From Octopus sinensis (lineage: Eukaryota), in contig NC_043001.1 in assembly GCF_006345805.1 (NCBI RefSeq), positions 62,310,001-62,374,000 of the forward strand: DNA of 64,000 nt, given 5' to 3'. Position 1 is the stretch's first letter, and every line of letters begins with the position of its first letter. The notes under the pieces were generated by a model. It was not told where the DNA came from and ran no database searches. It saw only the letters and a program-made list of their open reading frames with translations. Below, in pieces: positions 1-60,900 of the stretch. A program made the position numbers and the translations under genes.

Positions 1-99
1 CAAAAATCCCCTACCTTATGGGAATAATACATCTTGAAGTTAGCTTTTACACCTTGATCCACTGGCTAGAACAAACAAGTTGTATTCTAAGGGATATCT

Positions 100-936
100 T
101 CTACTCTCAAATTAGGAGAAAGCTCATTTAAGTTCACTAGGTAGTTTGATGTCTTGTCTAAAATGAGCAATATTTTATTGGCACTGTATCTTTCTACAGT
201 AGACAAAAATGTTTGCAAATCATTCTTAGTCATCTATGCTTTCTTATTTGAATGCCAAATCAGAAGCAAATTCAAGTTTTGCACTTCAATTTTTGGAGTG
301 ATACACGAGTCGGGGACTTGAATTTTATATCACCAGAGACATTTTCTCTTAGAAACTTGATGATTCTTGGAAACTTTACACCTTGATGTTGACTTTTCTT
401 CTTGAGAAATAAAAGTTCTAGCAGGTAAGCACTTCCAGAAAAGTGCAGTTTCATCAGTATTGTAAACTTCTGGTATGTAGCCCTCTCCAGTAACCATTTT
501 TTTTTCAGCAGCTTGGAATAATTAGCAGCAGCTTCAGTCTCAGCACTGGCAGCTTCTCCAGTTAATTTTAGGTAGTGTAAATTCAAGCACTTCTTCAACC
601 TTTCAAATCAGTCTTTACTAGTCAGAAAAGGTTTTTATTAGAAGTTACCCCTTACTTTCTCTGAAAATACTCATACAAACTTCTTGCATTTTTTAAAATT
701 ACTATGTGTTTATTGACACCATGTGTTGAGCCTTACCATCTACCCAAACAAAAAATAAGATCTGAACAGTTAACAGAGTATTGTTTTTGAACACTTGACT
801 TAATTTTCTCCCTATTGTCACATATTATTCCAGGTGTTGATGTTACAAACTTTTGTTTTGGAAATGTGGCTGGCTTTTTCACCTGTATGAAGACTTTTTC
901 AAACATCAAGTTTAGTATCCAGTACAATTTTTTCAT
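100..936 (-). mobile_element. pogo/Tigger (TIGD1-like) transposase remnant
   Basis: Frameshifted peptides KLTGEAASAETEAAANY, VYNTDETALFWKCLPARTFIS, plus an N-terminal HTH-like segment (733-936). Confidence 0.75.
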
Positions 937-4630: not shown

Positions 4631-5420
4631 AGCCTCTCTCAACAACAAGACAATATAATAATTACAATAACTGCCTACATGATAAACAAAACGTTAATAA
4701 GTGTTTAAAAAAAACTGTTAGTAGAATTGACGTCAAAGTTAGATCTCTGAGGACAACCCCAACAGAATTAAATTTTTGTCTAATAATTCTAAGATTAGGA
4801 ATTCTATATACCAGTGTAAAATTTCTTCCGGTACCGATGTCTTCTTCTATATAGGTGCATCCACTTCCCAGTTATCCAAGAGAATTTCAAACCATTATTC
4901 ATCATTTAGGGATAGCAAAAAACGACATAGTACAGGGCTAAGTAAATTAGTTTGGCGTCTTAAAGACAACAATATAGATTTTAAGTTAGATTGGTTCATA
5001 CTGTCTGTATCCTTTCCTTTTGATAAGGGCAGGAGATTTTGTAACATTTGCAACTCTGAACTCTTCCATATTCTCTTCTCTAAGGATCCCCTTGTAAACA
5101 CACATTTGTACGAGAAATCGTACAAATGTAAACACTGGCAGAAACATACATTTTACTCATATAAATGATTTCGATAGTCATAGTTTGAACAATTAGTTTA
5201 ACGTGCACTTCACTTCAATAGAGAAATCCTTTCCTAAGCCTTTGAACATTCTTTTAATCAACGTACCCCTCCCTCTCTATTTTTCCTTTAACCCTTCTCT
5301 TCCTACTATCTAACTTTGATGTCAATTCTACTAACGGTTTTTTTTAAACACTTATTAACCTTTTATTTATCATGTAGGCAGTCATTGTAATTATTATATT
5401 GTCTTGTTGTTGAGAGAGGC

Positions 5421-5516
5421 TCCCTTTCTTTCCTGATGAGAAGATTGCATCTTACACTGTTTATTCCTTTGGAATAAAACCATGTTGTCTTCAAAACATA
5501 TGTCGAAAGTAAAAGA
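5421..5516 (+). ncRNA. Hammerhead ribozyme copy with G12A core substitution (probably inactive)
   Basis: Inverted twin of 4536-4630; CUGAUGA at 5433-5439 but C-AAAAC at 5492-5497 instead of C-GAAAC. Confidence 0.7.
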
Positions 5517-5859
5517 ATTTTATTAACATCTTCATTCAACTCCATTTATTTATTTATTCATTTATATATATATAACACACACACAAATAGGCATGTATTT
5601 AAATTTATAAATAAAATGTACACATTTAAAGGACAAGAGGAATCCTGCTAATTAGTGGTGCCACTGGTGGAAGAAATGGGGAAGGAAAATACAAGGACCC
5701 CTATCACTCTCTGCAACCAAGTTTTATGATTATTAATGACGAGAAATTTTTTAATGGTAATATTTCTACATTTTATATCATTACAACTTAATGAGATAAA
5801 ATGCATGCATAATATGAATCAGTAATGCCTGTAAATCAATAAGAAAATTCAGTAGGTGC

Positions 5860-8491: not shown

Positions 8492-9160
<669 letters not shown>

Positions 9161-11740
9161 TCATGTCATCATCTAATATTATAACTAATTTCTGTGTGTC
9201 ACACATTAATCCCCTCTTTCACTATTCAATGACACTCCTACAATTCCTCATGATGGGGTAAGAGTAATAGTAGACATAGAGACAGCGAGGGCAGTGGTGA
9301 AGACAGAGAGAGAGAGAGAAAGAAAAAGACAGGGAGGGTGGTAGTGGAAGTAACAATAAGAGAGAGAAAGAGTGAGATGATGTACAACTTTGTTAAACCA
9401 TGTCTATTTGACAGAAATTCCTGTGGCCAACATACTGACCAGCATACTGAAAACTATCATTTTTGTTTTGTCTTTTGCTTGGCACTTTAAGGGGAAAAAA
9501 TGCTTTTAATGATGACTGTACCCCATTCTATTTTCATTGTTTTCCCCATCCTTGAACTCATGTCTCATGCCAGTAACTATACAACAGGGGAAAAAACTAA
9601 CTAAATAAATAAATGGTAAAAAAATTTCAAATTGAAAAGAAATCCCTCCCCCTCCTGCTCTCTACCTATCTGTCTGTCTGTCTGACTATCCATCTATTTA
9701 TCTCCATTGTCCTGGAACCTCACACCAAAATTAAACATCTATATCTTCTACCATAAATATCTGAAAATCATGAAGACAAATGTTTTTGCTTTATTATGAT
9801 ATAAAAATCCATGGGGGTAGGTCAGATAATTGTTATGGAATATAAAAGTGAAGATTTTTATCATTAATTTTCACTTTGAAAAGTGTAGACTTTTTTTTTC
9901 AAGATCTTTATATCATAAGGGAAAAAATTTCTCACAAATTCAATATGGTCATTGTTAAATCTAGCCATCATATGGCAAAAAAAAGCAAAGCCGACAAAAA
10001 GGGTGGTATACTGATATACTTCCCAAAACTAACATATTTGCATATGACAAGAGGTCAAATGGAATACAAATCCAAGGCTAAATTGAGTTTAATAAGTCTT
10101 CTAGAGCCCAAACTTAGCATGGAATCATTGTATTGAGAATGTTTATTTCCTCTCGCTGTTTTAACACATGGAGGGCTGGATGGGTAAACCTAGCAAGATA
10201 TTCTTGTACATGTAAATTTCGTCTTTCTTTGAGAAATATTGGTCAAATTCTGCCAATAAAAATTATATTATGCAATGAATATAATTTTGTACACTATTAA
10301 AGTCAGATGCGATTTTTTTTGATTTTGAATACAGTCAGGATAATTTGTGTTAGTGTTTACATATTTGTGGGGGTGGGGGTCTCTCTCCAACTAACAAGTT
10401 TGCTATAAACTACAGATGTTTTTAATGTCTTTATATTTTTAAAGCAAGGAATTAGATTTCACATTTTGTTTGTTTTTTAATCTAGGTCTACATGCAATTC
10501 TGAGAAACATATTAGGTGGTCGTAGGATGTGCTAGAAACACCAGCTAAATCTCCCTTAAACCACACACCATTCCATTTGAAAATATTTTCAATTTTTTTT
10601 TTCTTTCTTAACCAAAAAGGCTTCTCTCATCGTTTTTTAAGTGTATAGTACAAACAAAATTGACCAAAATTGGTCCAGGTGGGTAGGAGGAGAGAGGAAG
10701 GGGGAATCCTAAATTAAAAAAAAAAAATTTTTATAGAAAGCTTTACCCCCATCATTTCCAAGATCATGATGCAAAACAATTGGGAAAATCCAACTTATGT
10801 GGACATCCTAATCTGAAATTCAACTATTTATTGCCATTTTTAATAGTTCATTAACATTTTATTGAAATGGTGTCAATTCCCAAAATCTCATGATTTTTTT
10901 TTACCTCCATACCTATTACAAATATGCCAAAACTCAAGTTTCTGTGGCCTGTGTTTTTGGATTTGGCTAGGTCTTAAAACGCTGCAAAATCAACCATTTG
11001 TTGCATGTAACAAAATAAGCTTTACATAAATATCTAAAAAATTGCCAAACAAAAAATTCTTTCCAAGAACCTAAAAAAAAGTTAGGCAACTGCTATACCA
11101 TGGTCACTATTAATTTATGTAACTTGAAGATGATTATCACCTCAGTTTCAAAGATATGACATCACAAATATGGCTAATTATTCATTTAGGCCAATTAGGC
11201 AAGATTTCAAACAATTTGCTAACTACTGAAATTGTCATATTTCCTAAAATATTCATCCAAATTTCACAAATGATGTTTCAAAATGTTTCTCTTTAGATGC
11301 TCTCAAACAAAAAATACAGCAAAAATTACAATGTTAATACCAGTTCAAATATGCCAGGAGCATGTTCAGACTTGTAAACAAGTCAGTCACTGTGTTTTGT
11401 CATGGAGAAAATTTCTCACTGTAGACAAATGGTGTAAAATACAACCAAGTAGAAATTACATTTAAATATTTTCAAAACTTCATAGTGATAGCTATTATAA
11501 TAGGCTATATCAACTGCTCTAATTAATAACTTCTGAAACATCATGTCTTTTGAATAAATGTAATGATTTCTAAATCATAAAATTGTTTGTAATATAGAAT
11601 TATGAGAAAGAAAATTAAAAGTTTATGACTTTCCTTGAAAATATTAGTGACTCCAGTAAAATAGCTTTAACCAGAAATTGTATATGGTTATTTTGTGGTG
11701 GTATTTTAGCCGCATTCAGATTTCGTATTATTAAATTTTA

Positions 11741-16200: not shown

Positions 16201-18946
16201 GAGATAAATCCATATTTTTTAAATTGCATTTGATTTATATAACTAGCATTTTTCTTTACATTATCTTTTTTTAGTGTGTCTGTTTCATGTAACTAACCCA
16301 GTTTCTACTATATTTCTTGTGAAATACACAACTTTCATTTCAATTAATTCTGAAAATAATGAAGAATTTAGTAAAATAACTATCACTATTTAGAAGATAA
16401 ATTAACATGAAATTTTGATAGAATGTTTCAATTTAAATTAGCTTATAACAATAAGTTTGTATCATAGAACCAGGAGCAGTCTCAAACAGATTCATATCAA
16501 TAGAGTTAATTAACAGCTAACATGCGCAACATTATTTTTAGTACAAATGACCATTTATATTTAAAAAATTAAGCCTTTTTTGCAATACTATCAATTTTTA
16601 CAAGTACAGAAAGACATTATTAGCATTTAAATAAACCTATTATTTATGTAATTTCTGGTCAAGACTGTAAGACTGAGCTTTTGATTTACAAAATTCTCAA
16701 CAGTATGTTACAAGTTAATCTATTTTTCTACTTATACATTCCTCCTAATGTAATAGAGGTTGCAATCACACAAATATTATCAGATAGAATAAACCTAAAA
16801 TACCAAATACATACAGTGAAGATAAATATTCTACAACCAATATTTCATCACGGATTTAATAACAACAACAAATACACCTTAATCAACACCAAAAGGAAAA
16901 ATGGGAATGATTAAGATAAAGTATAGCTCTCACTCAAAGAGTATATGACTTATTGCATTTCAGATTCCTTAAAGCTGAATAAAGCATGTTTTTAATTTTG
17001 TTTTAATAAAATCTCTAGGGAATGCTTAATAGAGTTTTAAAACATTAACTCTTTCTAGTAACTGACCTTCAACTGCTCAAATTCTAACCAGCAACATATA
17101 ATATACTATATATATTTCACAATAACCAATAAGATTTCCAATAAATCTGTAGTAATCTATGGATATAGATGAAGATAATATTTTTACCTGGTAGCAATTT
17201 TAATTGGAAAATTATTTCTGTCTGTTGTTGCCACAAGAACAGAAATCAATATAAAAAGGAAACGATTTTTGAATAAAGATTCCCTGTTTTTAGTTTCATT
17301 AGAGAGACTTTTTTTCAAAATGAATTGCTCTGCAATAATACTGGGATTAGTGAGTAACTTTGTTATTTTAACTCTTACTCTCATGTACAGTTCTCTATGT
17401 TTTAACTCCTTCTTCATAGAAGGATTTGGCAAAAAGAGACTAAAAACAGGTGGGTATGTTTAGAATATAATAACTTTTCTTCTAATGGATAGATTTCAAT
17501 GATATTTTTGAATTATTCAAGGATATGATTGTTATCCATGTTGAGAGTATTATTTTTATTGTCATTGCCATATGTTGATGGATTTGTTTATTTTACCTGT
17601 AATTAGTATGAAAATTTAATAAACTAGTAAAATAATTGCTAGTAAAATAAACAGCACTGATGAACAAACAACAGCAACAACAAAAATATTTACTGACCTA
17701 TATGATGCTTGAATGCAAAATTAGTATTCCAATAAAAGGTGCAAACAGGTAAGTAATCCATAGCTTGAGAATCATACTTGAGCCACTTTCAAAGTCACAG
17801 TCACTTTATGAATAATGAATGTTTACTGTACAACACACAAAAGTTCTGCTACACAAACATGTACTGAGTGAGTTTTGGCTTGTTGTCCTTGTTACTGTCT
17901 GTGACATCGTTACAAGGGAGCACAGGTGAGCCTCGTTCCTTTGAAATGCATCCATAAGGAAACAAAACTATAGTTGGTAATTGTGGAATGTGGCAAAACA
18001 TCCACTGCCTTTGCAAAGTGCTACTCCACAACATTTGCATTCCCATGAGGTCTGGATTTTGTTACCAGCAGGTGTATGAACTGTGCCCTTTGAACACAAG
18101 ACACAATTCCATAGTCCTCTCTTGGTCTGGATTTTTGTTGGCTCATGATATGATGGGTTCTTCAACATCAGTATGGGACTCCCTTTTCCTGGATGAAAAG
18201 TTGTTGAGACTCTTAGTGACCTTGACATGAAAAGCCAGGTGAGACAGCAGTTTAGGGTGGGACCCACCTGGTGCTTCCTTGTGCAAAATGTATGTGTTGA
18301 TCATGGTGATGTTACAGAAAAACCAGAACATGTACTTCCACCATTTTCATGCACTGACAGCAATGCCATAGTAGGACCACAGCTGATTGTCTTTGTCAAC
18401 AGCATTGTAGTTTGTGCTGTATTCTTGGATTGCAATGGGTTTCTGGTATATATGGTCACAGGTATGCCACATCAGTTGCTTCTGATTGTGCCATAGGAGT
18501 AGATTATTTTTCTTCAAAAGACCTTCCATCAAATCCATGGAGGTGAATAAGTTGTCAAAATAGCTGTAATGCTATTTCTTGTAGTATGGGGGCACGAGTT
18601 TTCTCACTACTCTAGTACCAAGAAGCAGGTTGTCTTCAGACACAATTTCTTTTCCTGTGTACATGCCAAAGTCCACAAGGTAAAACAACTCGCAGTCACA
18701 TTGCCCAGGCCTCTATTCCCCGTTTGTACAGCTTTGATGGAACATACTGAAGAAACAAGCATCTTCCCTTGAAATTCACCATTGCTTCATCCACTGCCAT
18801 GTTTCTATGTGGCTTGTAATACCTTGAAAACTGGTTCTTGGCATTGTTGATGATGGGGTGCACCTTGTGGAGTTTGTCAAGGGTTTCCCCTTGGTGAGTT
18901 TTGGGTAAAATCATTGGCATGAAAGTATTTCGTAATTTCTTCATAC

Positions 18947-21271
18947 TGTAGCAAGTCTTAATAAACCTTTATCGGCAGTGATTTGACGTCATGGTCATGT
19001 TGGCCACATAGGTATAATTATTAGTTTCCCATTGGTTAAAATTACTACCCATATTTGAATTCTAACTTTCGTCAAAGAGAAATCTTTCATAGCTAAGCTA
19101 CAAAGAAATCCACTTATATTCTCTTCTTAAATATAAATCTAGAGTTAAACTAATTTCTCCAAATGTTTGGATGTCAGACTGATTCTTCACTGCTTGTAGG
19201 GTCAAATAAGCAGGTTTAGGCTTCTCTGTTATAAATTTTAGCAGGCCAAATTGAACAAGCCGCTCCTGTATCAACTAAGAATCTTTGTTTGGAGTTAGAG
19301 TCAAATATGAAGAATATGTGACTTTTTATGAAGTTGTCCACGGATTTCATTGTGTCTAATCTGTGGTTGAGAGGTTTCCCAGCTTTTTCTTTGTTCAGAA
19401 AATCAAATGAGCATGGTTTAATACAACAATAAGATTTGACACTAAATTTTGAATGGTACCAGCATATAGCATTTCTTCTGGGACTTTTTGGTCATCCACG
19501 CCATCTTGCCTTATTTCTGTTATGAGAACGCTTATCTCTTCTAAGTTGAAAACTTTCAATTTTGTCTGTTAATAATTTTAATTGTTTTTCGTAAGTTTCT
19601 TTCATCTTCTGTAATTCTGAAGAAATGGATGGTAAAGCATTAACGGACTTTCTAGATGATAATTCCAATATACCATCTGCTAAATCTGCTGTTTGAGAGA
19701 GTTTTGCTCTTTCACCGCTGAAAGTAGAGTTTGAGTTCTATGAGGCAACTTACCAAAGAAAACTTCTTTAAGATAAGACTCTTCTATCTGTTGATTCCCG
19801 AGAAGTTCTTTCATTCTACAAAAAAGTTGAGTAGGTTTTCTGTCACCTTGTTCGTTATTGAACAACTTGGCGAATTCTTTTTGCTTGGAGTTGGAAGTTC
19901 TCTTTAGCATCTCTTCTTTCACAGAAGAATACGAAAATGGGTCAGTAGGATCTATTAATAAGTCTCTAATTTCATTGCTCACAGGTGGTGGTAAGTTGCT
20001 TAACATAATGTTATATTTTTATGCCTCTGTTATTCTGTTTGCTGCAAAACTTGCTTCTAATTGAGCAAACCAAATAATGGTGTCTCCTGTCCAAGGAGGA
20101 GGCAAAACTATCACAGAAGTTTGCATATACCCTCTATTGAAATAAGACATTTCAAACTCTTTAATATTTTCTTCCATTCAAATGTATTAAAATTTACAAA
20201 AAGAAAATTTTTCCCTTAGTGAAATAATGCTTTCAACAGCTATGAAGTATAAATTTAGCTTGCTAGAAAGTGCAGCTAAAACTTTTTACGACTATTATTG
20301 TTTTATTTCTTCAGCATTCTTTCTTCCTTCAACCTTTAATATCAAATATTTCTGTTTATAAAATTTTGTATAATGAAACTGTCATCTATTTTCATCTTTT
20401 TTAATATTTTTCACAAGGGTCACCAAATTTATAACAGTGTGTGTATTGAGAAGAATGATGAGTGGCAATTTATAACAGTGGAAAATTACCAATAACAATT
20501 AGATCATTTAATCTGTTTATAATGTGTTCAACTTGAAAATATAATGAATATAAATATTTCTTTAGCAGGAATCTGTGGTAAATCCATCACTTATAACTTA
20601 ATTATAAGTATTTTATCACCTTACATAAATTCTAGCTCAGACTACATAAACGCTGTGGTGAATTATATACACCAGGATGCTGAACATGCATGTATATTGA
20701 ATATAAACAAGCTCACTCTTTTTCACTGCTATACAGTTTCAATAGTTACAGAAATAAATTTCATCAACAGGTTAAAGAAAGGAAGATAAAGAAATCATTT
20801 ACTAAATTAATTTATTTACGTACACTTGATATTTGCAGTACATTTTTATAAGTAAAAAAAGAGACTGTCATAGAGAGTTATGACATAAAAATTGTATGGT
20901 TAATGTTTACATGTATTATCTAATTCTTTCATAACTAAGCTACAAAGAGTTTTAAACAACAATTCAAAATAGCCTTGTTGAGTTAGACAAAAGACTTAGC
21001 ATCATAATAACAAATCTCAGGAAAGTGAGTGTCATGGAATCAAGTGACAACCAACGAACACTGATTTATTTCCCAAAAATCAGGGTTTTTATAACTGCTG
21101 ATATCTGAATTCTAAGAACTGTATTTCATGAAAGATTTCTCTTTGATGAAAGTTAGAATTCAGATATGAACAGTAATTTTAACTAATGGGAAATTAATAA
21201 TTATACCTATTTGGCCAACATGACCATGATGTCATATCACTGCCGATAACAGTTTATTAAGACTTGCTACA
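18947..21271 (-). mobile_element. TGT..ACA element with 144-bp TIRs and ATAC TSD carrying gypsy-type PBS-gag-protease
   Basis: TIRs 18947-19090 and 21128-21271 (12 mismatches by eye); TSD ATAC at 18943-18946 and 21272-21275; PBS TGGTGACCC 20425-20417; gag from ATG 20150; FLVDTGA with DTGA at 19272-19261. Confidence 0.85.
19100..20150 (-). pseudogene. Ty3/gypsy-type gag and aspartic protease, disrupted
   Basis: LPPPW...IWFAQLEASF, LPPPVSNEIRDLL, GDRKPTQL, CWYHSKF..CCIKPC knuckle, RFLVDTGAACSIWP; stops and frameshifts; no RT, RNase H or integrase. Confidence 0.85.
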
Positions 21272-22179
21272 ATACCTATTTACAGTCATCACCTTGGCAA
21301 TAGACTGCTGGTGGAAGACTTCATCTTTACCCCACTACTGCCTATAACTAGGTAGTCGCACAATCCCCACAAGAATTAAAATTCCCACATTCGCTTTCAT
21401 TTCAGCCACACTGATTGTAAAGTTTTCATTGTTCTTCTAACTAGCATTCAAGCTTGTCAGCTCAACTGATCCCTCAGACATTGTAATTGGAAACAATTGA
21501 ATAAAGTAATCAATTGGTTCTGCTGTCACTGACAGAGGTCTTGTAGACCCACTAGCTTCATTAAACGTACCCATTATGGTGCCTCTGATAATGCCAGTCT
21601 ACTCCAAATCATCATAATCCAAATCATCTGAACTTGACAAGTCTGAAATTTCTGCCTCACTGAAATCCAAAAGATCACTTGTATACACTGACGACACAGA
21701 TACATCACTTGTACATTCTCCTCAATCATGACTAACAAAATTGCTAAATGAAGAATTGCTATCAGACGCAGCATCAACCATTTTCACAACAAACTTGCCC
21801 AAAATAAATTTGTAAAAAATATTGAAAAATGATCTCAAAGCACAACCAAAACAAGTATGGCCAGGGTAAAGCAGAAATCAAGCTTTTACAAAGCTTTCTG
21901 TGCGTAGGTGCAACTTTAATGTTATGGGTCATATCCTGTGCAACCAGTTTGTGTACCTAATGACAAGGCTCGTTTTCAGGTGGTTCATGAATGAGTGTCT
22001 ACCGCAGATTGGAGCGGTTTATGACGTTAAGAATTAAAACTGAAGACCTCTTAGACTACAGCATCCTTAAATTTGTGCAAACAACAATATTGTTATTCAT
22101 ATACATGAAAAGATACTGGGCAAAAACAAACATAAGCTAATGCATCCAGCATATAAATATAATAATCCAGCAAGAGTTA

Positions 22180-25099: not shown

Positions 25100-26265
25100 C
25101 AGTTTAGACTTGTCTGTAATGCTGTGGAAACACCAGAGTAAGAGGCCAATAGACTAGCCTATCAAACTACAAACACAAGCACACGTATGCATGTATGTGC
25201 ACATAGAGGACCCGCACATTTTACCTACAAGACAAATGTTGGTATGGGGAAGACGGTACAAACTGCCAGTTTGTTCACCCGAGATCCTGCCAAAACTACA
25301 GGGGCCTTAAGGGGAAATACTTCCCTGAGGAAAGGCACCAATCACCTCCAAAGAAAAAATGAACAAATGCAGTGTGCTCTTCAGATGTTATGCACAAGGC
25401 AGCAGCTGGGCAAATCGTTTTGTGCATGGTGCAAAAGATAGTGCAGCAGCTGACCTGGCTACATCAAGTACAAACAAGGAACCTTGCCCACCACTGCACA
25501 AGATCACCACAATCAACAGACATGGGATGGCCTCCCCTAACATCTGCACAGTTTCATGCAAATATTTTTACTAAACATTGGGAGCCTGTTGCATCACAAC
25601 AAATGCAGAATTTTTTTCCTGAGAGACCTTGCTGCATGCAATCTAGCCCTATGCATAGCACTCATGGAAACTCACCTGAGCCCTGATACAGAGGATGCAG
25701 AACTACACATACTGAAATACACCATACTGTGAACAGACAGAAGGGAAAGGAGTCATGGTGGATTTGCTGTATACATCCGTGAAGACATCACACCCCAGGT
25801 CTTTCTGTCATACTCAAATTCAGAATGTGACACTGTAATTGTATACATAAGACAACACAGTATAGCCATATGCAATACATCACCTACCAGATGCTCCAAA
25901 CCACATAGGCAAGTTTGAAGATTGCCTCACAAAAATTTAAGAAATCCTCATGAAACTGGAACACCATGTGAGCCTTTTTCTTATGGGTGATTTCAACTCC
26001 CCCAATGTCAAATGGCCCAAAGGCCTCATGCTCTCAGGAATGACTCATTGCAAAGAAGCACAGCTGGAATCCCTGCTCAACCTCACCAATGCCCTATTCA
26101 TGGAACAAGTTGTACTCAGATCAACTAGGGCAAATAACATTTTGGATCTCAGCTTCACAAACAATATTGACATCATTCATGATATGAAAGTCATGCCAAC
26201 ATTAGTTTTGGATCATAGCATAATACAGCTGTCTCTGTATGGACCAAAAGTCAGCAATAGAAGAA
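25100..26265 (+). mobile_element. CR1/L2-group LINE remnant (APE endonuclease)
   Basis: RTDRRERSHGGFAVYI, LFLMGDFNSPNVKW, NILDLSFTN, LDHSII. Confidence 0.75.
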
Positions 26266-26661
26266 AAGCAACCATCTTTGGTTTCAAGACAAAGGGTATT
26301 CTTCCATGCTCAGACACATACAGTAGGGATGACATTCTAAAGGCTGGAGCAGTTTGAATGGGAAATGATGCCCCAACCACCATATTTGACAGACATTGCC
26401 CCATCTAATTATCATTTATTCTGCAGTCTTCAAAATCATTTGGATGGAAAAAAAATATGAATTCTGTAAACAAGGTCAGAAGAGTAGAGGAAGAGTATTT
26501 TTCATCACAGACAAGTGAATTTTGAAAGAGAAGCCTTGCAAGTTTACTAGATAAGTGGAAGTGCATTGTATAAAATGAAGGAGAGTGCAATTTAGATTTT
26601 AAAAGAATGAAAAATAAAAGAAGTATTAAAAAACCGGCTTTACTAATGGGATCATCCAATA
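26265..26661 (+). mobile_element. mariner 3' fragment
   Basis: WEMMPQPPYLTDIAPSNYHLFCSLQNHLDG; ends in TIR-like tactaatgggatcatccaata. Confidence 0.7.
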
Positions 26662-28807: not shown

Positions 28808-32162
<3,355 letters not shown>

Positions 32163-34429: not shown

Positions 34430-34870
34430 TATATAATAATAATAATTGTGTACAGTGCTCAGGTGCACTACAACTCATCTAAAGTGTATATATAATCAGG
34501 TGTAGTTTCGGCAGATTTCGGAAAGCATGAGGGCCTTAAAGGATGCAGTGTCATGGCAGTCAACAACTGACGCAGGCAGTTTATTCCATGCTTCAGCAAC
34601 TCTGAGCGTGAAAAAATGTTTCCGAAGGTCATGGGAGCTGTGTTGTTTTCTGATTTTGTAGGCATGTCCACGTGTGTTAGACACATGTAGATCAAAAAGG
34701 GGTTCGGTGTTGTTGTTGGTGAGGTGGTTGATAACTTTGTGGGTGTTTACCAAGTCCGTCGCCATATATTGTGGGTGTGTACCAAGTCCGTCGCCAGTCC
34801 GTCGCTTCAGTAAATCCATGCCCAGGGAAACAAGGCGCTCAGAATATGGTAGGTGTCTGATGGAGGATTT
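34430..34870 (-). mobile_element. CR1-type LINE 3' end
   Basis: [34 protein letters not shown]; (ATT)n tail. Confidence 0.85.
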
Positions 34871-34876
34871 GCGTTT

Positions 34877-34995
34877 ATATATATATATATATATATATGC
34901 ATATATATGTATGTATATATATATATATGTATATATATATATTTGTATGCATATATATATATATGTATATATATATATTTGTATGCATATATATG

Positions 34996-35026
<31 letters not shown>

Positions 35027-35123
35027 GATATATATATATTATATATATATATGTTATATATATATTGTATATATGTATGCATATATATATATATATGTAT
35101 ATATATATCTTTGTATATATGTA

Positions 35124-35172
<49 letters not shown>

Positions 35173-35188
35173 ATATATGTATGCATAT
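34877..35188. repeat. Compound (TA)n/(TATG)n microsatellite
   Basis: Directly visible; source of the low-complexity IYIY ORFs. Confidence 0.95.
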
Positions 35189-35189
35189 A

Positions 35190-36106
35190 TCATCATCATC
35201 ATCATCATCATTTAGCGTCCGTTTTCCATGCTAGCATGGGTTGGACGGTTCTACTGGGGTCTGTGAAGCCAGAAGGCTTCATCAGGCCCAGTCAAATCTG
35301 GCAGTGTTTCTACGGCTGGATGCCCTTCCTAACGCCAACCACTCCGTGAGTGTAGTGGGTGCTTTTTACGTGCCACCCGCACTGGTGCCAGACAGAGCTG
35401 GCAAACGGCCACGAACGGATGGTGCTTTTTATGTGCCACCGGCACGAGGGCCAGGCGAGGCTGGCAACGGACACGAAACGGGGCGGTGCTGGCAACGGTC
35501 GCGAAACGGAAAGTTCTCTTACATGCCACCGGCACTGGTAACACATCCGCAATTTCCATTGATCGATTTCGATTCTGATCCTCACTTGCCTCAATGGGTC
35601 TTCACAAGCAGAGTTTTGTGTCCCAAGAAGGGAAGGTATGCATACGTAGGCTGGCTCCATCCCATGTAGAAGGCCACGGATTGTGGACTCATGTTGTCCT
35701 GACGGGTCTTCTCGCGCACAGCACACTTCCAGAGGTCTCGGTCTCTAGTCATTTCCTCAGTGAGACCTAAAGTTCGAAGGTCGTGCTTCACCACCTCGTC
35801 CCAGGTTTTCCTGGGTCTGCCTCTTCCACAGGTTCCCTCAACCGCTAGGGTGTGGCACTTTTTCACACAACTATCTTCATCCATTCTCGCCACATGACCA
35901 TACCAGCGCAAACGCCTCTCTTGCACACCACAACTGATGCTTCTTAGGTCCAGCTTTTCTCTCAAGGTACTTACACTCTGCCGAGTGTGAGTACCGGCAT
36001 TACACATCCATCGGAGCATACTGGCTTCATTTCTAGCGAGCTTACGCATATCCTCAGCAGTCACGGCCCATGTTTCACTGCCATGTAGCATGGCTGTTCG
36101 TACACA

Positions 36107-36435: not shown

Positions 36436-37227
36436 CTATCCGTTTTCTTTAGGGGACCAAAAACGTAACAGAAATTTAGTCACATGTGGGCATGATCCGA
36501 AAAGCTCTGTCCTTGTATTTAGACATGTGGTAGGGTCTAAGCTGCTTTTCCAGATAAGCCATCTCTCCATGTCGCATAAACCGCACCTTCCGCTGCCGTT
36601 AGTATAGGGCTTACATCTGGCCAAAATCTTCCATTGTATGTTATAATCGACACCTTTATCTCTTAAAGACCAAATATGATTGGATAATTGTGTCGCTTTT
36701 CTTTTGTTCCAGTGCCTAAAGCTCAAAGTGTGGTTATTGAACCTGGCCTTGAAATTACCCTCTGTCAGGCCCACATATTTCTTCGTCGAAACAGTGTCTT
36801 TAGTGGTTATAGAGTTTACGGTAGCTTCATATATGATGGTCTTGGACATGCAAGCTCCATTTAGCGGGCACAATTCTTTATTCCTGCATGAACAGCTGTT
36901 TTCTTGTGTTTTTTGTATGTTATGATTGATTATGTTTTTAAAATTGGTAGTTGAACTAAAACTAATTTTTAAATTGTGTCTATTGAAGAGTTTCCTATAA
37001 GCATGGTTAACTGGAAAATGTCTATCTATCAGTGCTAGGAAATATTTACCTATATTGAAGGCCACCTCGGGTGAGTAAGGGGGCGTAAACCAGATGACCT
37101 TCCTATTTCTATTATTCCTTTTCCTTATTGTTGGGCTGGTGATAGGTGTATATTTTATTTTTTCGCTAAAACCACTATCTTTTAAAGCTATTATAAACTG
37201 GGGCAACGCTATTGAAGATGTCCTCAT
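36436..37227 (-). CDS. PLE linker and GIY-YIG endonuclease (263 aa, uninterrupted)
   Basis: WFTPPYS, CxCx5CP, IYEA..YVG, RFNNH, CGLC, CPH. Confidence 0.85.
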   Translation of the reverse strand: MRTSSIALPQFIIALKDSGFSEKIKYTPITSPTIRKRNNRNRKVIWFTPPYSPEVAFNIGKYFLALIDRHFPVNHAYRKLFNRHNLKISFSSTTNFKNIINHNIQKTQENSCSCRNKELCPLNGACMSKTIIYEATVNSITTKDTVSTKKYVGLTEGNFKARFNNHTLSFRHWNKRKATQLSNHIWSLRDKGVDYNIQWKILARCKPYTNGSGRCGLCDMERWLIWKSSLDPTTCLNTRTELFGSCPHVTKFLLRFWSPKENG

Positions 37228-39718: not shown

Positions 39719-39818
39719 NNNNNNNNNNNNNNNNNNNNNNNNNNNNNNNNNNNNNNNNNNNNNNNNNNNNNNNNNNNNNNNNNNNNNNNNNNNNNNNNNN
39801 NNNNNNNNNNNNNNNNNN
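39719..39818. other. Assembly gap (100 N)
   Basis: Run of N. Confidence 1.
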
Positions 39819-44204: not shown

Positions 44205-44505
44205 CATATACATATATACATATATATATATACATCATCATCATCATCATCATCATCATTTAGCGTCCGTTCTCCATGCTAGCATGGGTTGGACGGTTCA
44301 AATGGGGTCTGTGAAGCTGGAAGGCTTCATCAGGCCCAGTCACATCTGGCAGTGTTTCTACGGCTGGATGCCCTTCCTAACGCCAACCACTCCGTGAGTG
44401 TAGTGGGTGCTTTTTACGTGCCACCCGCCCGCATATACATATACACATACACAACGATATATATATATATATATACACAAGATATATATATATATATATA
44501 CACAC

Positions 44506-44554
<49 letters not shown>

Positions 44555-44601
44555 ATATGCAAAGATATATGTATATATATATATATATATATATACAAAG
44601 A

Positions 44602-44666
<65 letters not shown>

Positions 44667-45127
44667 AGTATATAAATACATAGTGAAACTAATAGAAATG
44701 GAACTAATCTCTATATATAAAACTGAAATGCGTTTTTACCGCTTGGATCGCTTTCAATGCCACTACATCCCGTCCGATTCGCTCCAAAATTTACAGGGAC
44801 ATGTAGAATGAGGTGACGAAGCTCGTGGACTACCTTAGAAATCCCTATCTTAAAAGGTGTGGTTGCTAGGGGCCATCTTCCTCACTCACGCTATTTCCTC
44901 CAGTACCCTCCCACTCCTCTTCATTTATAACTTTCACAATTCCACTACCATTATTTAAAGTATCTGTCACTCTCGCTATTTCCTCTCTTTTTCACTAACT
45001 CTGTTTCCTACCTTCCCATCACTTCGGCGGCGTTCTTTTATGTATCTGTCTGTCACGAACAACACACGAGCATGAGAACAAATATTATGAATCAGATATT
45101 CTTGCGTTCATTTATGTGTGTGTGTGT

Positions 45128-57963: not shown

Positions 57964-60900
57964 TCATCATCATCGTTTAACGTCCGTTCTCCATGCTAGC
58001 ATGGGTTGGACGGTTCGACCGGGGATCTGGGAAGCCAGAAGGCTGCACCAGGCTCCAGTCTTATCTGGCAATGTTTCTACAGCTGGATGCCCTTCCTAAC
58101 GCCAATCACTCCGTGAGTGTAGTGGGTGCTTTTTACGTGCCACCTGCACAGGTGTCAGGCGAGGCTGGCAACAGCCACGGTCGGATTGGTGTATTTTATG
58201 TGCCACCGGCACGGAGGCCAGTCGAGGCAGTGCTGGCATCGGCCACGAGTCCGATAGTGCTTTTTACGTACCACCAGACCAGGGATCCTGGCTGGTTCAA
58301 TTCGATTTCGATTTCGCTTGCCCCAACATCCAACATGTCTTCGCAAGCAAAGGGGGTTGGCATGGGTGCCTGTTGTACGGTCGGATTGGTGTATTTTACG
58401 TGCCACTGGCACGGAAGCCAGTGGAGGCGGCGCTGGCATCGGCCACGAGTCGGATAGTGCTTTTTACGTACCACCAGACCAGGGATCCTGGCTGGTTCAA
58501 TTCGATTTCGATTTCGCTTGCCCCAACATGTCTTCGCAAGCAAAGGGGGTTGGCATGGGTGCCTGTTGTCGGATGAGGTTCTATATCGACTTCACTTGCC
58601 TCAACAGGTCTTTGTGTCCAAGGGAGGAAAGGCATTCATAAGTGGGCTGGGCTCACTTGTCCTGCCTGGTCTTCTCACGTACAGCATATTTCCAAAGGTC
58701 TCGGTCGCTGGTCATTTCCTCAGTGAGGCCTAAAGTTCGAAGGTCGTGCTTCACCACCTCGTCCCAGGTTTTCCTGGGTCTACCTCTTCCACGGGTTCCC
58801 TCAACTGCTAGGGATTGGCACTTTCTCACACACCTATCTTCATCCATTCTCGCCACATGACCATACCAGCGCAATCGTCTCTCTTGCACACCACAACTGA
58901 TGCTTCTTAGGTACATTTCTCTCAAGGTACTAACGCTCTGTCGAGTATGTACACTGACATTACACATCCATCGGAGCATACTGGCTTCATTCCTCACAAG
59001 CTTACGCATGTCCTCAGCAGTCACGGCCCATGTTTCACTGCCATGTAGCATGGCTGTTCGTACACATGCATCATACAGTCTGCCTTTTACTCTGAGCGAG
59101 AGGCCTTTAGTCACCAGCAGAGGTAAGAGCTCCCTAAACTTTGCCCAGGCTATTCTTATTCTAGCAGTTATACTTTCAGCGCACCCACCCCCACTACTGA
59201 CTTGGTCACCTAGATAACGGAAGCTATCAACTACTTCTAGTTTTTCCCCCTGGAAAGTGACGGAAGTTGTTTTCTGCAGATTTTTGGAGGTTAATGCTCC
59301 CGAGCATCTGCCACATACAAAAACTATCTTCCCAGTTAGCCTACCTTTGACATTGCTGCACCTCTTATGTGTCCATAGCTTACAATGGGTACATCTTATA
59401 GAGTTTCTACCTACACCTTTTCTACAGATCGAGCAGGGCCATCTTCCTGAAGACATTTGTGGATTGTCTACCTTCCTACTTATTAGTACTTTGGTTTTAG
59501 CTAGGTTGACTCTAAGGCCCCTCGATTCTAAACCCTCCTTCCACACCTGGAACTTCTCCTCCAGTTCTGATAGTGACTCAGCAATTAGAGCAAGGTCGTC
59601 AGCGTAGAGGAGCTCCCAGGGACAACCTGTCTTGAATTCCTCCGTAATTGCCTGGAGGACTATGATAAATAGGAGGGGGCTGAGTACTGAACTCTGGTGG
59701 ACCCCAACCTCTACTTTGAATTCTTCTGTGTACATGTTGCCAACCCTAACCTTACTTACAGCATCTCTGTACATGGCTTGCACAGCCCTCACCAGCCATT
59801 CATCTATCCCTAGTTTCCTCATTGACCACCAGATAAGGGATCGGGGGACCCTATCAAAAGCTTTCTCCATGTCAACGAAAGCCAGGTACAGGGGCTTATC
59901 TTTGGCTAGGTATTTCTCCTGCAGCTGCCTTACCAGGAATATAGCATCAGTGGTACTTTTCACTGGCACGAACCCAAACTGCATCTCATCCAAACTAACT
60001 CTCTCTCTAATTAGTTGGGTGATGACTCACTCCGTAACCTTCATTACCTGATCCAACAGCTTGATACCTCTGTAATTATTTGTATCTAGGGCATCACCTT
60101 TACCTTTGTAGCAGTTGACTAGTATGCTGCTACACCAGTCATTGGGTATGACTCCGTGTATCACCTTGTTGACTATACGGGTGACTAGGTTATAGCCGAC
60201 ACTGCCAGATATTTTGAGCATCTCTGCAGTAATTCCTGATGGGCCTGGGGCTTTCCCTGTCTTCATGCTTCTAATTGCTTTAACTACCAAAGAATTTTCA
60301 ACTCGGATGGCTGGTCCCTCTGTTGGGTTGACATTCGGCAGACTCTCTTTATCCCATTCATTTTCTTTATTCAGCAACCTTTCATAGTGGCATCTCCAAA
60401 CCTCTCTCTTTGCATCCTCATTTAGCGCAAGTGAACCATCATCCATGCGAACACACTTCTCTCCTACCACATCACGATTCTCTCTCACACACTGTCTTGC
60501 AACACGAAATATCTCAAGTCTTTCATCCTCACAGCTCAGAACACTGGCAAATTTTTTCTTATCTGCTTCCCCTCTGGCTAAATAAACCTGTCTCTTAGCT
60601 TCCCTTCTGGCTGTCTGATACAATTCCCTGCTACCACCGTTCTTCCAGTCCTTCCAAGCCTGCTTCTTTTCTCTAATAACCCTGTCAACAACATTGTTCC
60701 ACCACATTATTTTGTGTTGAGAGGGGACTTTGCACCATTCATAGATCTGGTCAGTGGCCCTCAGCAGGTTGTCCCGTAGAAACCTCCAGTTGTCTTCTAC
60801 ATTGTGTGAAGCTATATCCCCTTCGAGTAATATGTCTCTAAATCTCTGTCCATTCACAGGATCTTTAAGCTTTTTGACCCTTCTCCTCCATGCTGGTCAT

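What the first reader, a model, noticed from the sequence alone, without database searches (positions are those of the whole stretch)
18947..21271. Retroelement gag-protease packaged between 144-bp inverted repeats and cleanly integrated (Ginger-like ends, gypsy cargo)
Seen: TGTAGC...GCTACA termini; 144-bp TIRs about 92% identical; an exact 4-bp TSD (ATAC) whose removal restores the host piggyBac frame VMTVNRYEEITKYFHAND. Inside are a PBS-like TGGTGACCC, a gag ORF with CWYH knuckle and a FLVDTGA protease, but no RT, RNase H, integrase or direct LTRs. Known: TG..CA ends with 4-bp TSDs come from gypsy-type integrases, and Ginger DNA transposons have such TIRs but encode an integrase. DIRS elements have inverted ends but lack TSDs and protease. 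Inference: this is either (a) a Ginger-type non-autonomous transposon that captured gag-pro, or (b) a defective LTR-retrotransposon cDNA with two U3-type ends, integrated in trans. Either would be an unusual retro/DNA hybrid.
Basis: partly seen in the sequence, partly recalled or inferred. Interest (0 to 1): 0.8.

Follow-up and report, generated by a model that had tools for sequence, protein, structure and literature searches.

The report
Defective octopus retrotransposon with inverted ends
This is a decayed, truncated copy of an ordinary octopus gypsy-type retrotransposon whose far end was replaced by an upside-down copy of its own first 144 bases before it was inserted, a rare copying accident rather than a new kind of mobile element.

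Summary
Window 18947-21271 is a 2325-bp unit with TGTAGC...GCTACA ends, 144-bp inverted arms (12 mismatches) and an exact ATAC duplication. Removing it restores a piggyBac transposase frame.

The unit is not a retro/DNA hybrid. From its right end inwards it is collinear with the first 2.2 kb of Ty3/gypsy-type elements of Octopus: an LTR of about 846 bp, PBS TGGTGACCC, a DUF7041 gag and the start of protease.

Four octopus relatives continue into protease, RT, RNase H and integrase at exactly the base where this copy breaks. One full-length relative has direct LTRs that also start TGTAGC, and a 4-bp duplication.

The break shows two overlaps. A 10-nt match joins protease to LTR position 324-350. 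An 11-nt match joins that patch to the reverse complement of LTR 1-144, at the apex of a strong hairpin in U3.

My best reading is a one-off aberrant cDNA carrying two U3 ends, inserted by the element's integrase and since decayed. The Ginger-type option is not supported.

The host genome could not be searched, so copy number is untested. Interest is modest.

The parts
18943..18946 (.). Left copy of the 4-bp target-site duplication ATAC
   Evidence: Sequence read; the empty-site join restores the piggyBac frame.
18947..19090 (+). Left arm: an inverted copy of LTR nucleotides 1-144 (U3 start). It reads in LTR sense on the + strand, opposite to the rest of the element.
   Evidence: 132/144 identical to the right arm; it ends exactly at LTR nucleotide 1 (TGTAGC).
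19080..19106 (-). 27-nt bridge identical at 25/27 to LTR position e324-350 (window 20922-20948). Its outer 11 nt (ATGAAAGATTT) overlap the left arm and its inner 10 nt (TCTTTGTAGC) overlap protease. These are the two microhomology junctions.
   Evidence: Direct repeat D3; BLAST E 6.9e-5; junction alignment; the relatives diverge right after ...GTAGC.
19097..20177 (-). gag plus the first part of protease, a pseudogene. Stops at 20019-20021, 19492-19494, 19216-19218 and 19098-19100. Frameshifts near 19683-19701 and 19202-19216. DUF7041 at about 19860-20102, CWYH knuckle at about 19410-19464, FLVDTGA at 19261-19281. Protease is cut off at 19097.
   Evidence: 61-82% amino-acid identity to annotated Octopus sinensis and O. 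bimaculoides gag proteins.
20417..20425 (-). Primer-binding site TGGTGACCC
   Evidence: The same TGGTGACCCC follows the 5' LTR in L001 and L002.
20426..21271 (-). Complete 5' LTR (about 846 bp). Its first 144 bp (21128-21271) form the right arm.
   Evidence: Collinear with the region upstream of the PBS in L001 from e28. It starts TGTAGC like both LTRs of the full-length relative L002. The 3' boundary is inferred from the PBS position.
21094..21174 (-). Hairpin-forming palindrome in U3 (e98-178, apex e128-141), just upstream of a TATAAA at 21088-21093. The arm boundary and the 11-nt overlap sit on its apex.
   Evidence: I2, I6.: -18.5 kcal/mol as ssDNA, z -6.2, 0 of 200 shuffles fold as well. 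A weaker equivalent exists in L001.
21272..21275 (.). Right copy of the target-site duplication ATAC
17968..21700 (-). Host sequence: a decayed piggyBac-type transposase gene split by the insertion (approximate outer limits).

Best explanation
The unit is a dead-end product of a Ty3/gypsy-type LTR retrotransposon of an octopus. A linear cDNA carried the U3 start (TGTAGC...) at both termini, in opposite orientation. The element's integrase joined it to the chromosome with the family's usual 4-bp stagger, inside an old piggyBac copy.

Shown: the unit equals 5' LTR - PBS - gag - part of protease, then 17 nt of LTR position 334-350, then the reverse complement of LTR 144..1. Both internal joins lie in overlaps of 10 and 11 nt. 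The unit has a clean 4-bp duplication.

Inferred route: during DNA synthesis in the particle, a growing plus strand jumped from protease to LTR position 324 of the downstream LTR. This is a direct-repeat deletion that removed the rest of pro, RT, RNase H, integrase, the polypurine tract and LTR 1-323. At position 350 its 3' end, ATGAAAGATTT, paired with the complementary AAATCTTTCAT (LTR 134-144), which is exposed at the apex of the U3 hairpin on a second, polypurine-tract-primed plus strand. Each strand then copied the other.

Run-off at the 5' end of that second strand explains why the inverted arm stops exactly at LTR nucleotide 1. That stop creates a second ...GCTACA-3' end, whose last four bases match the normal U5 end (...TTACA).

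The unit lacks a downstream R/U5 and a polypurine tract, so it cannot retrotranspose again. It has since decayed: about 9% divergence between the arms and several stops and frameshifts.
For: 1. Inverted arms, termini and duplication are confirmed, and the piggyBac frame is restored without a gap.
2. The element aligns from e28 to e2175 with an O. bimaculoides copy at 78% identity.
3. Three further octopus copies also align only up to e2175. All four then continue with DLPYPILGVDFL..., RT, RNase H and integrase.
4. The full-length relative L002 has direct 854-bp LTRs that start TGTAGC and end TTACA. It has PBS TGGTGACCCC and a 4-bp duplication, CTAA.
5. The 27-nt bridge matches LTR e324-350 at 25/27 and overlaps both neighbours by 10 and 11 nt.
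6. The breakpoint lies on the apex of a strong U3 hairpin.
7. With L001 as outgroup, 6 arm differences fall on the right arm and 3 on the left, mostly CpG-type transitions. So both arms decayed after a common origin.
8. Integrated proviruses with an intact 5' LTR and a deletion running from upstream into the 3' LTR are frequent in HIV-1 and are ascribed to template switching (PMC9278108).
9. Only about 20 terminal nucleotides of U3 or U5 are needed by integrase (PMC7240061).
Against: The order and strands of the template switches are inferred from the end product only. A two-cDNA route gives the same sequence. Copy number in the host genome is unknown, so 'one-off' is not demonstrated. No 3' LTR of the closest subfamily was available, because L001 is truncated. 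The U5 end of this copy's LTR cannot be placed precisely (there is no CA next to the PBS), so the U3/R/U5 boundaries are guesses. The overlap in protease is 10/10 in this copy but 9/10 or less in the relatives.
Confidence: 0.7

Rival explanations
1. Two cDNA molecules, not one. Integrase joined the U3 end of one cDNA and the U3 end of another to the two staggered cuts of one target. The free distal ends were ligated by host repair, giving a tail-to-tail dimer, which is a long palindrome. Two microhomology deletions then removed most of one copy and the pol half of the other.
For: In this layout all three pieces keep their natural orientation. On the + strand the order is B 1-144, then A's 3' LTR 350-324 antisense, then A's pro-gag-PBS-5' LTR antisense. 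Both junctions then become simple direct-repeat deletions (AAATCTTTCAT and GCTACAAAGA on the + strand). Long palindromes are unstable and are resolved by asymmetric deletions (general knowledge). The duplication and termini are explained equally well.
Against: It needs two cDNAs engaged by one integrase complex in vivo, plus two separate deletions that happen to leave both termini intact. No remnant of the second copy remains beyond 144 bp. The position of the join on the hairpin apex is not explained by this route.
Confidence: 0.15
2. It is a member of a non-autonomous family bounded by terminal inverted repeats (Ginger-like). The family would be moved as DNA by a gypsy-type integrase or Ginger transposase, and would once have captured gag-pro.
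For: The 144-bp arms, the TGTAG (TGTNR) termini and a 4-bp duplication all fall inside the published Ginger ranges (PMC2836005).
Against: The right arm is simply the first 144 bp of a full LTR followed by a PBS, and the whole unit up to e2175 is collinear with autonomous retroelements. The left arm is joined through a patch of LTR-internal sequence with overlaps, the signature of a copying accident. None of four relatives has the layout, and there is no other copy in the 64-kb window. The target ATAC fits neither CCGG/CCGT nor RTATAY. No excision mechanism is known for integrases.
Confidence: 0.07
3. Two successive ordinary insertions of the same family in opposite orientation, the second landing exactly in the 4-bp duplication of the first, followed by deletions. 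Alternatively, an assembly artefact.
For: Nested and neighbouring insertions are common in this repeat-rich window. The window contains a scaffold gap at 39719-39818.
Against: The second insertion would have to hit one particular 4-bp site to leave the host sequence uninterrupted with a single ATAC duplication. Artefactual fold-back assemblies give identical arms next to each other, not arms 8% diverged and 2 kb apart.
Confidence: 0.05

Closest known systems
Ty3/gypsy-type (Metaviridae-like) LTR retrotransposons with a DUF7041 gag, as found in Octopus bimaculoides and O. sinensis (loci L001-L004)
   Same: LTR start TGTAGC, PBS TGGTGACCC(C), gag and protease sequence (70-78% DNA identity), and a 4-bp target duplication.
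   Different: No RT, RNase H, integrase, polypurine tract or direct 3' LTR. The 3' end is an inverted copy of LTR 1-144.
Defective integrated retroviral proviruses with asymmetric LTRs or inversions (HIV-1; PMC9278108)
   Same: Intact 5' LTR. A deletion starts in the coding region and ends inside the 3' LTR. Attributed to template switching during reverse transcription. Still integrated.
   Different: Those proviruses keep the normal U5 terminus. Here the terminus itself is replaced by an inverted U3 start, so both integrated ends are U3 ends.
Ginger1/Ginger2 DNA transposons (PMC2836005)
   Same: Inverted arms within 40-270 bp, TGTNR termini and a 4-bp duplication. These features reflect a gypsy-type integrase.
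   Different: Ginger elements encode the integrase-like transposase and have their own arms, multiple copies and target preferences (CCGG/CCGT or RTATAY). This unit is entirely retrotransposon sequence, with an LTR, a PBS and gag-pro.
DIRS retrotransposons
   Same: Inverted terminal repeats on a retroelement.
   Different: DIRS elements use a tyrosine recombinase, make no target duplication and have an internal complementary region. None of these applies here.
Non-autonomous LTR elements (LARD/TRIM type)
   Same: Loss of pol. Dependence on proteins made by autonomous copies.
   Different: Those keep two direct LTRs, a PBS and a polypurine tract, and they amplify. This unit lacks a usable 3' LTR and polypurine tract.

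Membership tests
Ty3/gypsy-type LTR retrotransposon (as a defective derivative) | LTR beginning TG.. followed by a tRNA primer-binding site | tested here: met
   TGTAGC at e1. TGGTGACCC is at 20417-20425 and is conserved next to the LTR in L001 and L002.
Ty3/gypsy-type LTR retrotransposon (as a defective derivative) | gag and aspartic protease homologous to those of elements with PR-RT-RH-IN order | tested here: met
   DUF7041 gag. 70-78% DNA identity to copies that continue into RVT_1, RT_RNaseH, Integrase_H2C2 and rve.
Ty3/gypsy-type LTR retrotransposon (as a defective derivative) | Two direct LTRs | tested here: not met
   Only one LTR is present. The other end is an inverted 144-bp LTR fragment. 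The relative L002 has direct LTRs.
Ty3/gypsy-type LTR retrotransposon (as a defective derivative) | Short target-site duplication of the family's length | tested here: met
   ATAC here. There is a 4-bp CTAA in L002 and in L004.
Ginger DNA transposons | Inverted arms of about 40-270 bp with TGTNR termini and a 4-bp duplication | tested here: met
   144 bp, TGTAG, ATAC. Ranges are taken from PMC2836005.
Ginger DNA transposons | Encodes, or shares its termini with a copy that encodes, a gypsy-integrase-like transposase without RT/RNase H | tested here: not met
   No integrase lies in the unit. The only sequences sharing the arm (L001) are retroelements with an LTR, PBS, RT and RNase H. A genome-wide search was not possible.
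Ginger DNA transposons | Target preference CCGG/CCGT (Ginger1) or RTATAY (Ginger2) | tested here: not met
   The target is ATAC within TTCATACCTA. This is one site only, so it is weak evidence.
Ginger DNA transposons | Multiple copies with the same ends and different flanks | not testable with these tools
   The host genome is not searchable. There is no second copy in the window. Exact-ORF look-ups were negative, and the 20-mer scans gave only chance hits.
DIRS retrotransposons | Tyrosine recombinase, no target duplication, internal complementary region | tested here: not met
   A clean 4-bp duplication is present, an aspartic protease is present, and the relatives carry a DDE integrase.

The most novel reading that the evidence does not exclude
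The unit is not unique but the founder or a member of a small family of inverted-repeat-bounded, integrase-mobilised DNA units. That would be a natural intermediate on the path from an LTR retrotransposon to a Ginger-type DNA transposon. The Ginger authors called that transformation unclear and imagined it arising from two oppositely oriented LTRs (PMC2836005).
Probability: 0.07. Interest if true: 0.8.

Novelty: new variant of a known kind. Interest (0 to 1): 0.35.

Why it matters
It is a natural, sequence-resolved case in which a gypsy-type integrase appears to have inserted a DNA whose two ends are both U3 ends. It made the normal 4-bp duplication. This shows in vivo that the U5 end is dispensable if an inverted U3 end supplies ...TACA-3'.

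It also shows one concrete way for a retrotransposon to acquire long terminal inverted repeats in a single step: a strand switch at a U3 hairpin. That bears on how Ginger-type DNA transposons could have arisen from LTR elements.

As a single decayed copy it has no functional consequence for the host beyond disrupting an already dead piggyBac. For annotators it is a warning: TG..CA inverted repeats plus a 4-bp duplication do not by themselves indicate a DNA transposon.

Tried and rejected
- **Other copies in the window:** I searched by BLAST of the element against all 64 kb and found none.
- **Same or sister loci in public assemblies:** exact-product look-ups of three window ORFs were not on record.
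- **Collection scans:** I scanned metagenome and viral collections with the 20-nt arm terminus. There were five metagenome hits with no further similarity, so they are chance matches, and no viral hits.
- **A close piggyBac paralogue to show an empty site at DNA level:** only one 51%-identical protein exists in the database. It did give a gap-free protein alignment across the site.
- **A 3' LTR of the closest relative, L001:** absent. That copy is truncated near its integrase end.
- **tRNA genes in the window, to assign the PBS:** none.
- **Literature on integrated elements with inverted U3 ends:** no direct precedent in the searchable library.
- **One-junction model, rejected:** protease AGATTT joined directly to the arm. 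It needs an unexplained 11-nt insertion, whereas the 27-nt LTR match explains every base.
- **Autointegration, rejected:** the internal joins are not to an LTR terminus.
- **Housekeeping:** a script wrote the interval of the degenerate full-length relative in L002 to a scratch file as a BLAST subject. Nothing was printed, and the file was deleted.

Full report
**Observation.**
- The window carries a 2325-bp unit at 18947-21271 that begins TGTAGC and ends GCTACA.
- Its arms, 18947-19090 and 21128-21271, are 144 nt long and differ at 12 positions. These are 9 transitions and 3 transversions, K2P 0.089.
- ATAC stands immediately outside both ends.
- Joining the flanks with one ATAC restores ...AKVMTVNRYEEITKYFHAND... 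on the minus strand.
- That stretch matches the piggyBac transposase domain DDE_Tnp_1_7. It aligns without a gap across the join to an intact relative, P0036.
- So the whole unit went in as one piece with a 4-bp staggered cut.

**What the unit is made of.** The element's sense strand is the window's minus strand. I use e-coordinates, e = 21271 - position + 1. Read that way, the unit is:
- an LTR of about 846 bp (e1-846);
- TGGTGACCC at e847-855, then a 240-nt leader;
- a gag that matches DUF7041;
- a CWYH...C...PC knuckle and the protease motif FLVDTGA.

The reading frame is broken by stops at window 20019-20021, 19492-19494, 19216-19218 and 19098-19100. There are at least two frameshifts, near 19683-19701 and 19202-19216.

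The best protein matches are annotated 'uncharacterized proteins' of Octopus sinensis and O. bimaculoides, at 63-80% identity. The window therefore comes from an octopod. The species was not determined.

**Relatives.** I fetched the four octopus loci that encode those proteins.
- The O. bimaculoides locus L001 aligns with the window element from e28 to e2175 at 78%.
- L002, L003 and L004 align from gag to e2175.
- All four alignments stop at the same base, just after ...GTAGC in protease.
- There L001 and L002 continue with DLPYPILGVDFL and then RT, RNase H and integrase. In L002 these match RVT_1, RT_RNaseH, Integrase_H2C2 and rve. That is the Ty3/gypsy gene order.
- L002 is a full-length copy with direct LTRs (4893-5746 and 10307-11074, 89% identical).
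- Both L002 LTRs start TGTAGC and end TTACA. The PBS TGGTGACCCC lies one base after the 5' LTR, and the copy is flanked by CTAA on both sides.
- L001 has the same PBS at the equivalent place.

Hence the 144-bp arm is the start of an ordinary LTR, TGTAGC is the family's U3 terminus, and 4 bp is the family's duplication length. None of the four relatives has an inverted arm.

**The breakpoint.** After protease ...GGATTTCTTTGTAGC (e2175) the window reads TTAGCTATGAAAGATTT, and then the reverse complement of e133..1.
- The 27 nt e2166-2192 match e324-350 of the element's own LTR at 25/27 (window 19080-19106 against 20922-20948).
- This 27-mer is native to the LTR, because L001 has a diverged equivalent there.
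- It overlaps protease by 10 nt (TCTTTGTAGC). The relatives have TCATTGTAGC or TCATAGTAGC at that place.
- It overlaps the inverted arm by 11 nt (ATGAAAGATTT, the complement of e134-144).
- Overlaps of this length are not expected at random joins. They point to template switching or microhomology-mediated joining.
- The second overlap lies on the apex of a hairpin formed by e98-178 of U3. As single-stranded DNA it folds at -18.5 kcal/mol with z -6.2. A weaker version exists in L001.

**Mechanism (inferred).** The abnormal sequence reaches the very end of the unit and abuts the duplication. So the rearrangement must have existed when integrase acted, or integrase must have joined two separate U3 ends.

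The simplest single-molecule route has three steps.
1. A plus strand growing through gag-pro jumps to LTR position 324 of the downstream LTR. This is an ordinary direct-repeat deletion. The same class is frequent in HIV-1 as 'asymmetric LTR' proviruses (PMC9278108).
2. At position 350 its 3' end pairs with e134-144 on a nascent plus strand primed at the polypurine tract and paused at the hairpin.
3. The two strands copy each other.

Run-off at the 5' end of the tract-primed strand accounts for the inverted arm ending exactly at LTR nucleotide 1. The new end...GCTACA-3', shares its last four bases with the normal U5 end...TTACA. Integrases need only the terminal 20 nt or so of either end (PMC7240061). 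Integrase protein would have been present in the particle, so no help in trans is needed.

The product has no downstream R/U5 and no polypurine tract, so it cannot make a transposable transcript.

With L001 as outgroup, six arm differences map to the right arm and three to the left. Most are CpG-type transitions. The arms were therefore once more alike and both have decayed in place, consistent with the broken gag.

**Rivals.**
- **Two cDNAs.** Integrase joins the U3 ends of two cDNAs to one target, host repair links the free ends into a tail-to-tail dimer, and two direct-repeat deletions follow. This gives the same sequence without any strand switch. I cannot exclude it and give it 0.15.
- **A Ginger-like non-autonomous family.** It fits the arm length, the TGTNR termini and the 4-bp duplication (PMC2836005). 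But every base of the unit is retrotransposon sequence, and the left arm is attached through an LTR-internal patch. The target is neither CCGG/CCGT nor RTATAY, and no other copy was seen. I give it 0.07.
- **Two sequential insertions into the same four bases, or an assembly artefact.** The first needs a base-exact coincidence. The second is hard to reconcile with arms that differ by 8%. I give them 0.05 together.

**Limits.** The decisive test is the copy number of the junction in the host genome. It could not be run, because no collection available here holds that genome. The LTR's U5 end and the U3/R/U5 borders are not defined, because the sequence next to the PBS (...CACTGTTATAAATT) lacks the expected CA. 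The exact order of the switches is a model.

**Procedural note.** briefly wrote the interval of the degenerate L002 element to a scratch file as a BLAST subject. It was not printed, and it was deleted.

**Verdict.** The unit is an unusual but explicable by-product of a known kind of element. It is of modest interest unless further copies turn up.

Noticed in passing
L004 4848-9005 (O. sinensis CM016860.1): A second rearranged copy of the same clade. It has normal U3 and U5 termini and a clean CTAA duplication. Relative to its LTRs and integrase, the PBS-gag and protease blocks are inverted and permuted, and RT-RNase H is missing. Because its ends are normal, the rearrangement could have happened before or after integration.
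   Followed up: partly
L002 4889-4892 / 11075-11078 and L004 4844-4847 / 9006-9009: Two independent relatives are both flanked by CTAA (TTAG in element sense for L004), while the window copy has ATAC. This may be a target preference or a coincidence.
   Followed up: no
window 20426-20439 and 20467-20480: A 14-nt direct repeat, CACTGTTATAAATT (sense strand), lies at the 3' end of the LTR. One copy abuts the PBS. The LTR has no CA next to the PBS, unlike the relative L002 (...TTACA C TGG), so the U5 terminus of this subfamily is undefined.
   Followed up: no
window 18980-18990, 19030-19036 and their counterparts in 21128-21271: The left arm and the O. bimaculoides LTR keep a TGACGTCA palindrome (CRE-like) and CCATTGG (a CCAAT box). 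The right arm, in the 5' LTR, has lost both by CpG-type transitions.
   Followed up: partly
window 58653-60857 and 30237-31961; also 25950-26357: Two diverged copies of a non-LTR (LINE-type) retrotransposon: RVT_1 with a PHD-like finger, plus endonuclease (Exo_endo_phos_2) fragments.
   Followed up: partly
window 36436-37227 (-) and 4776-5168 (+): ORFs of 263 and 130 aa share a C-terminal block (..NH..SFR......T.LS..IW.L.D.......W.IL..) and have no Pfam match. They are probably another repeat family.
   Followed up: no
window 34674-35234, 44407-44811, 39719-39818: Long TA/CA-rich microsatellite tracts that produce spurious 'YIYIYI' ORFs, and a 100-N scaffold gap.
   Followed up: no
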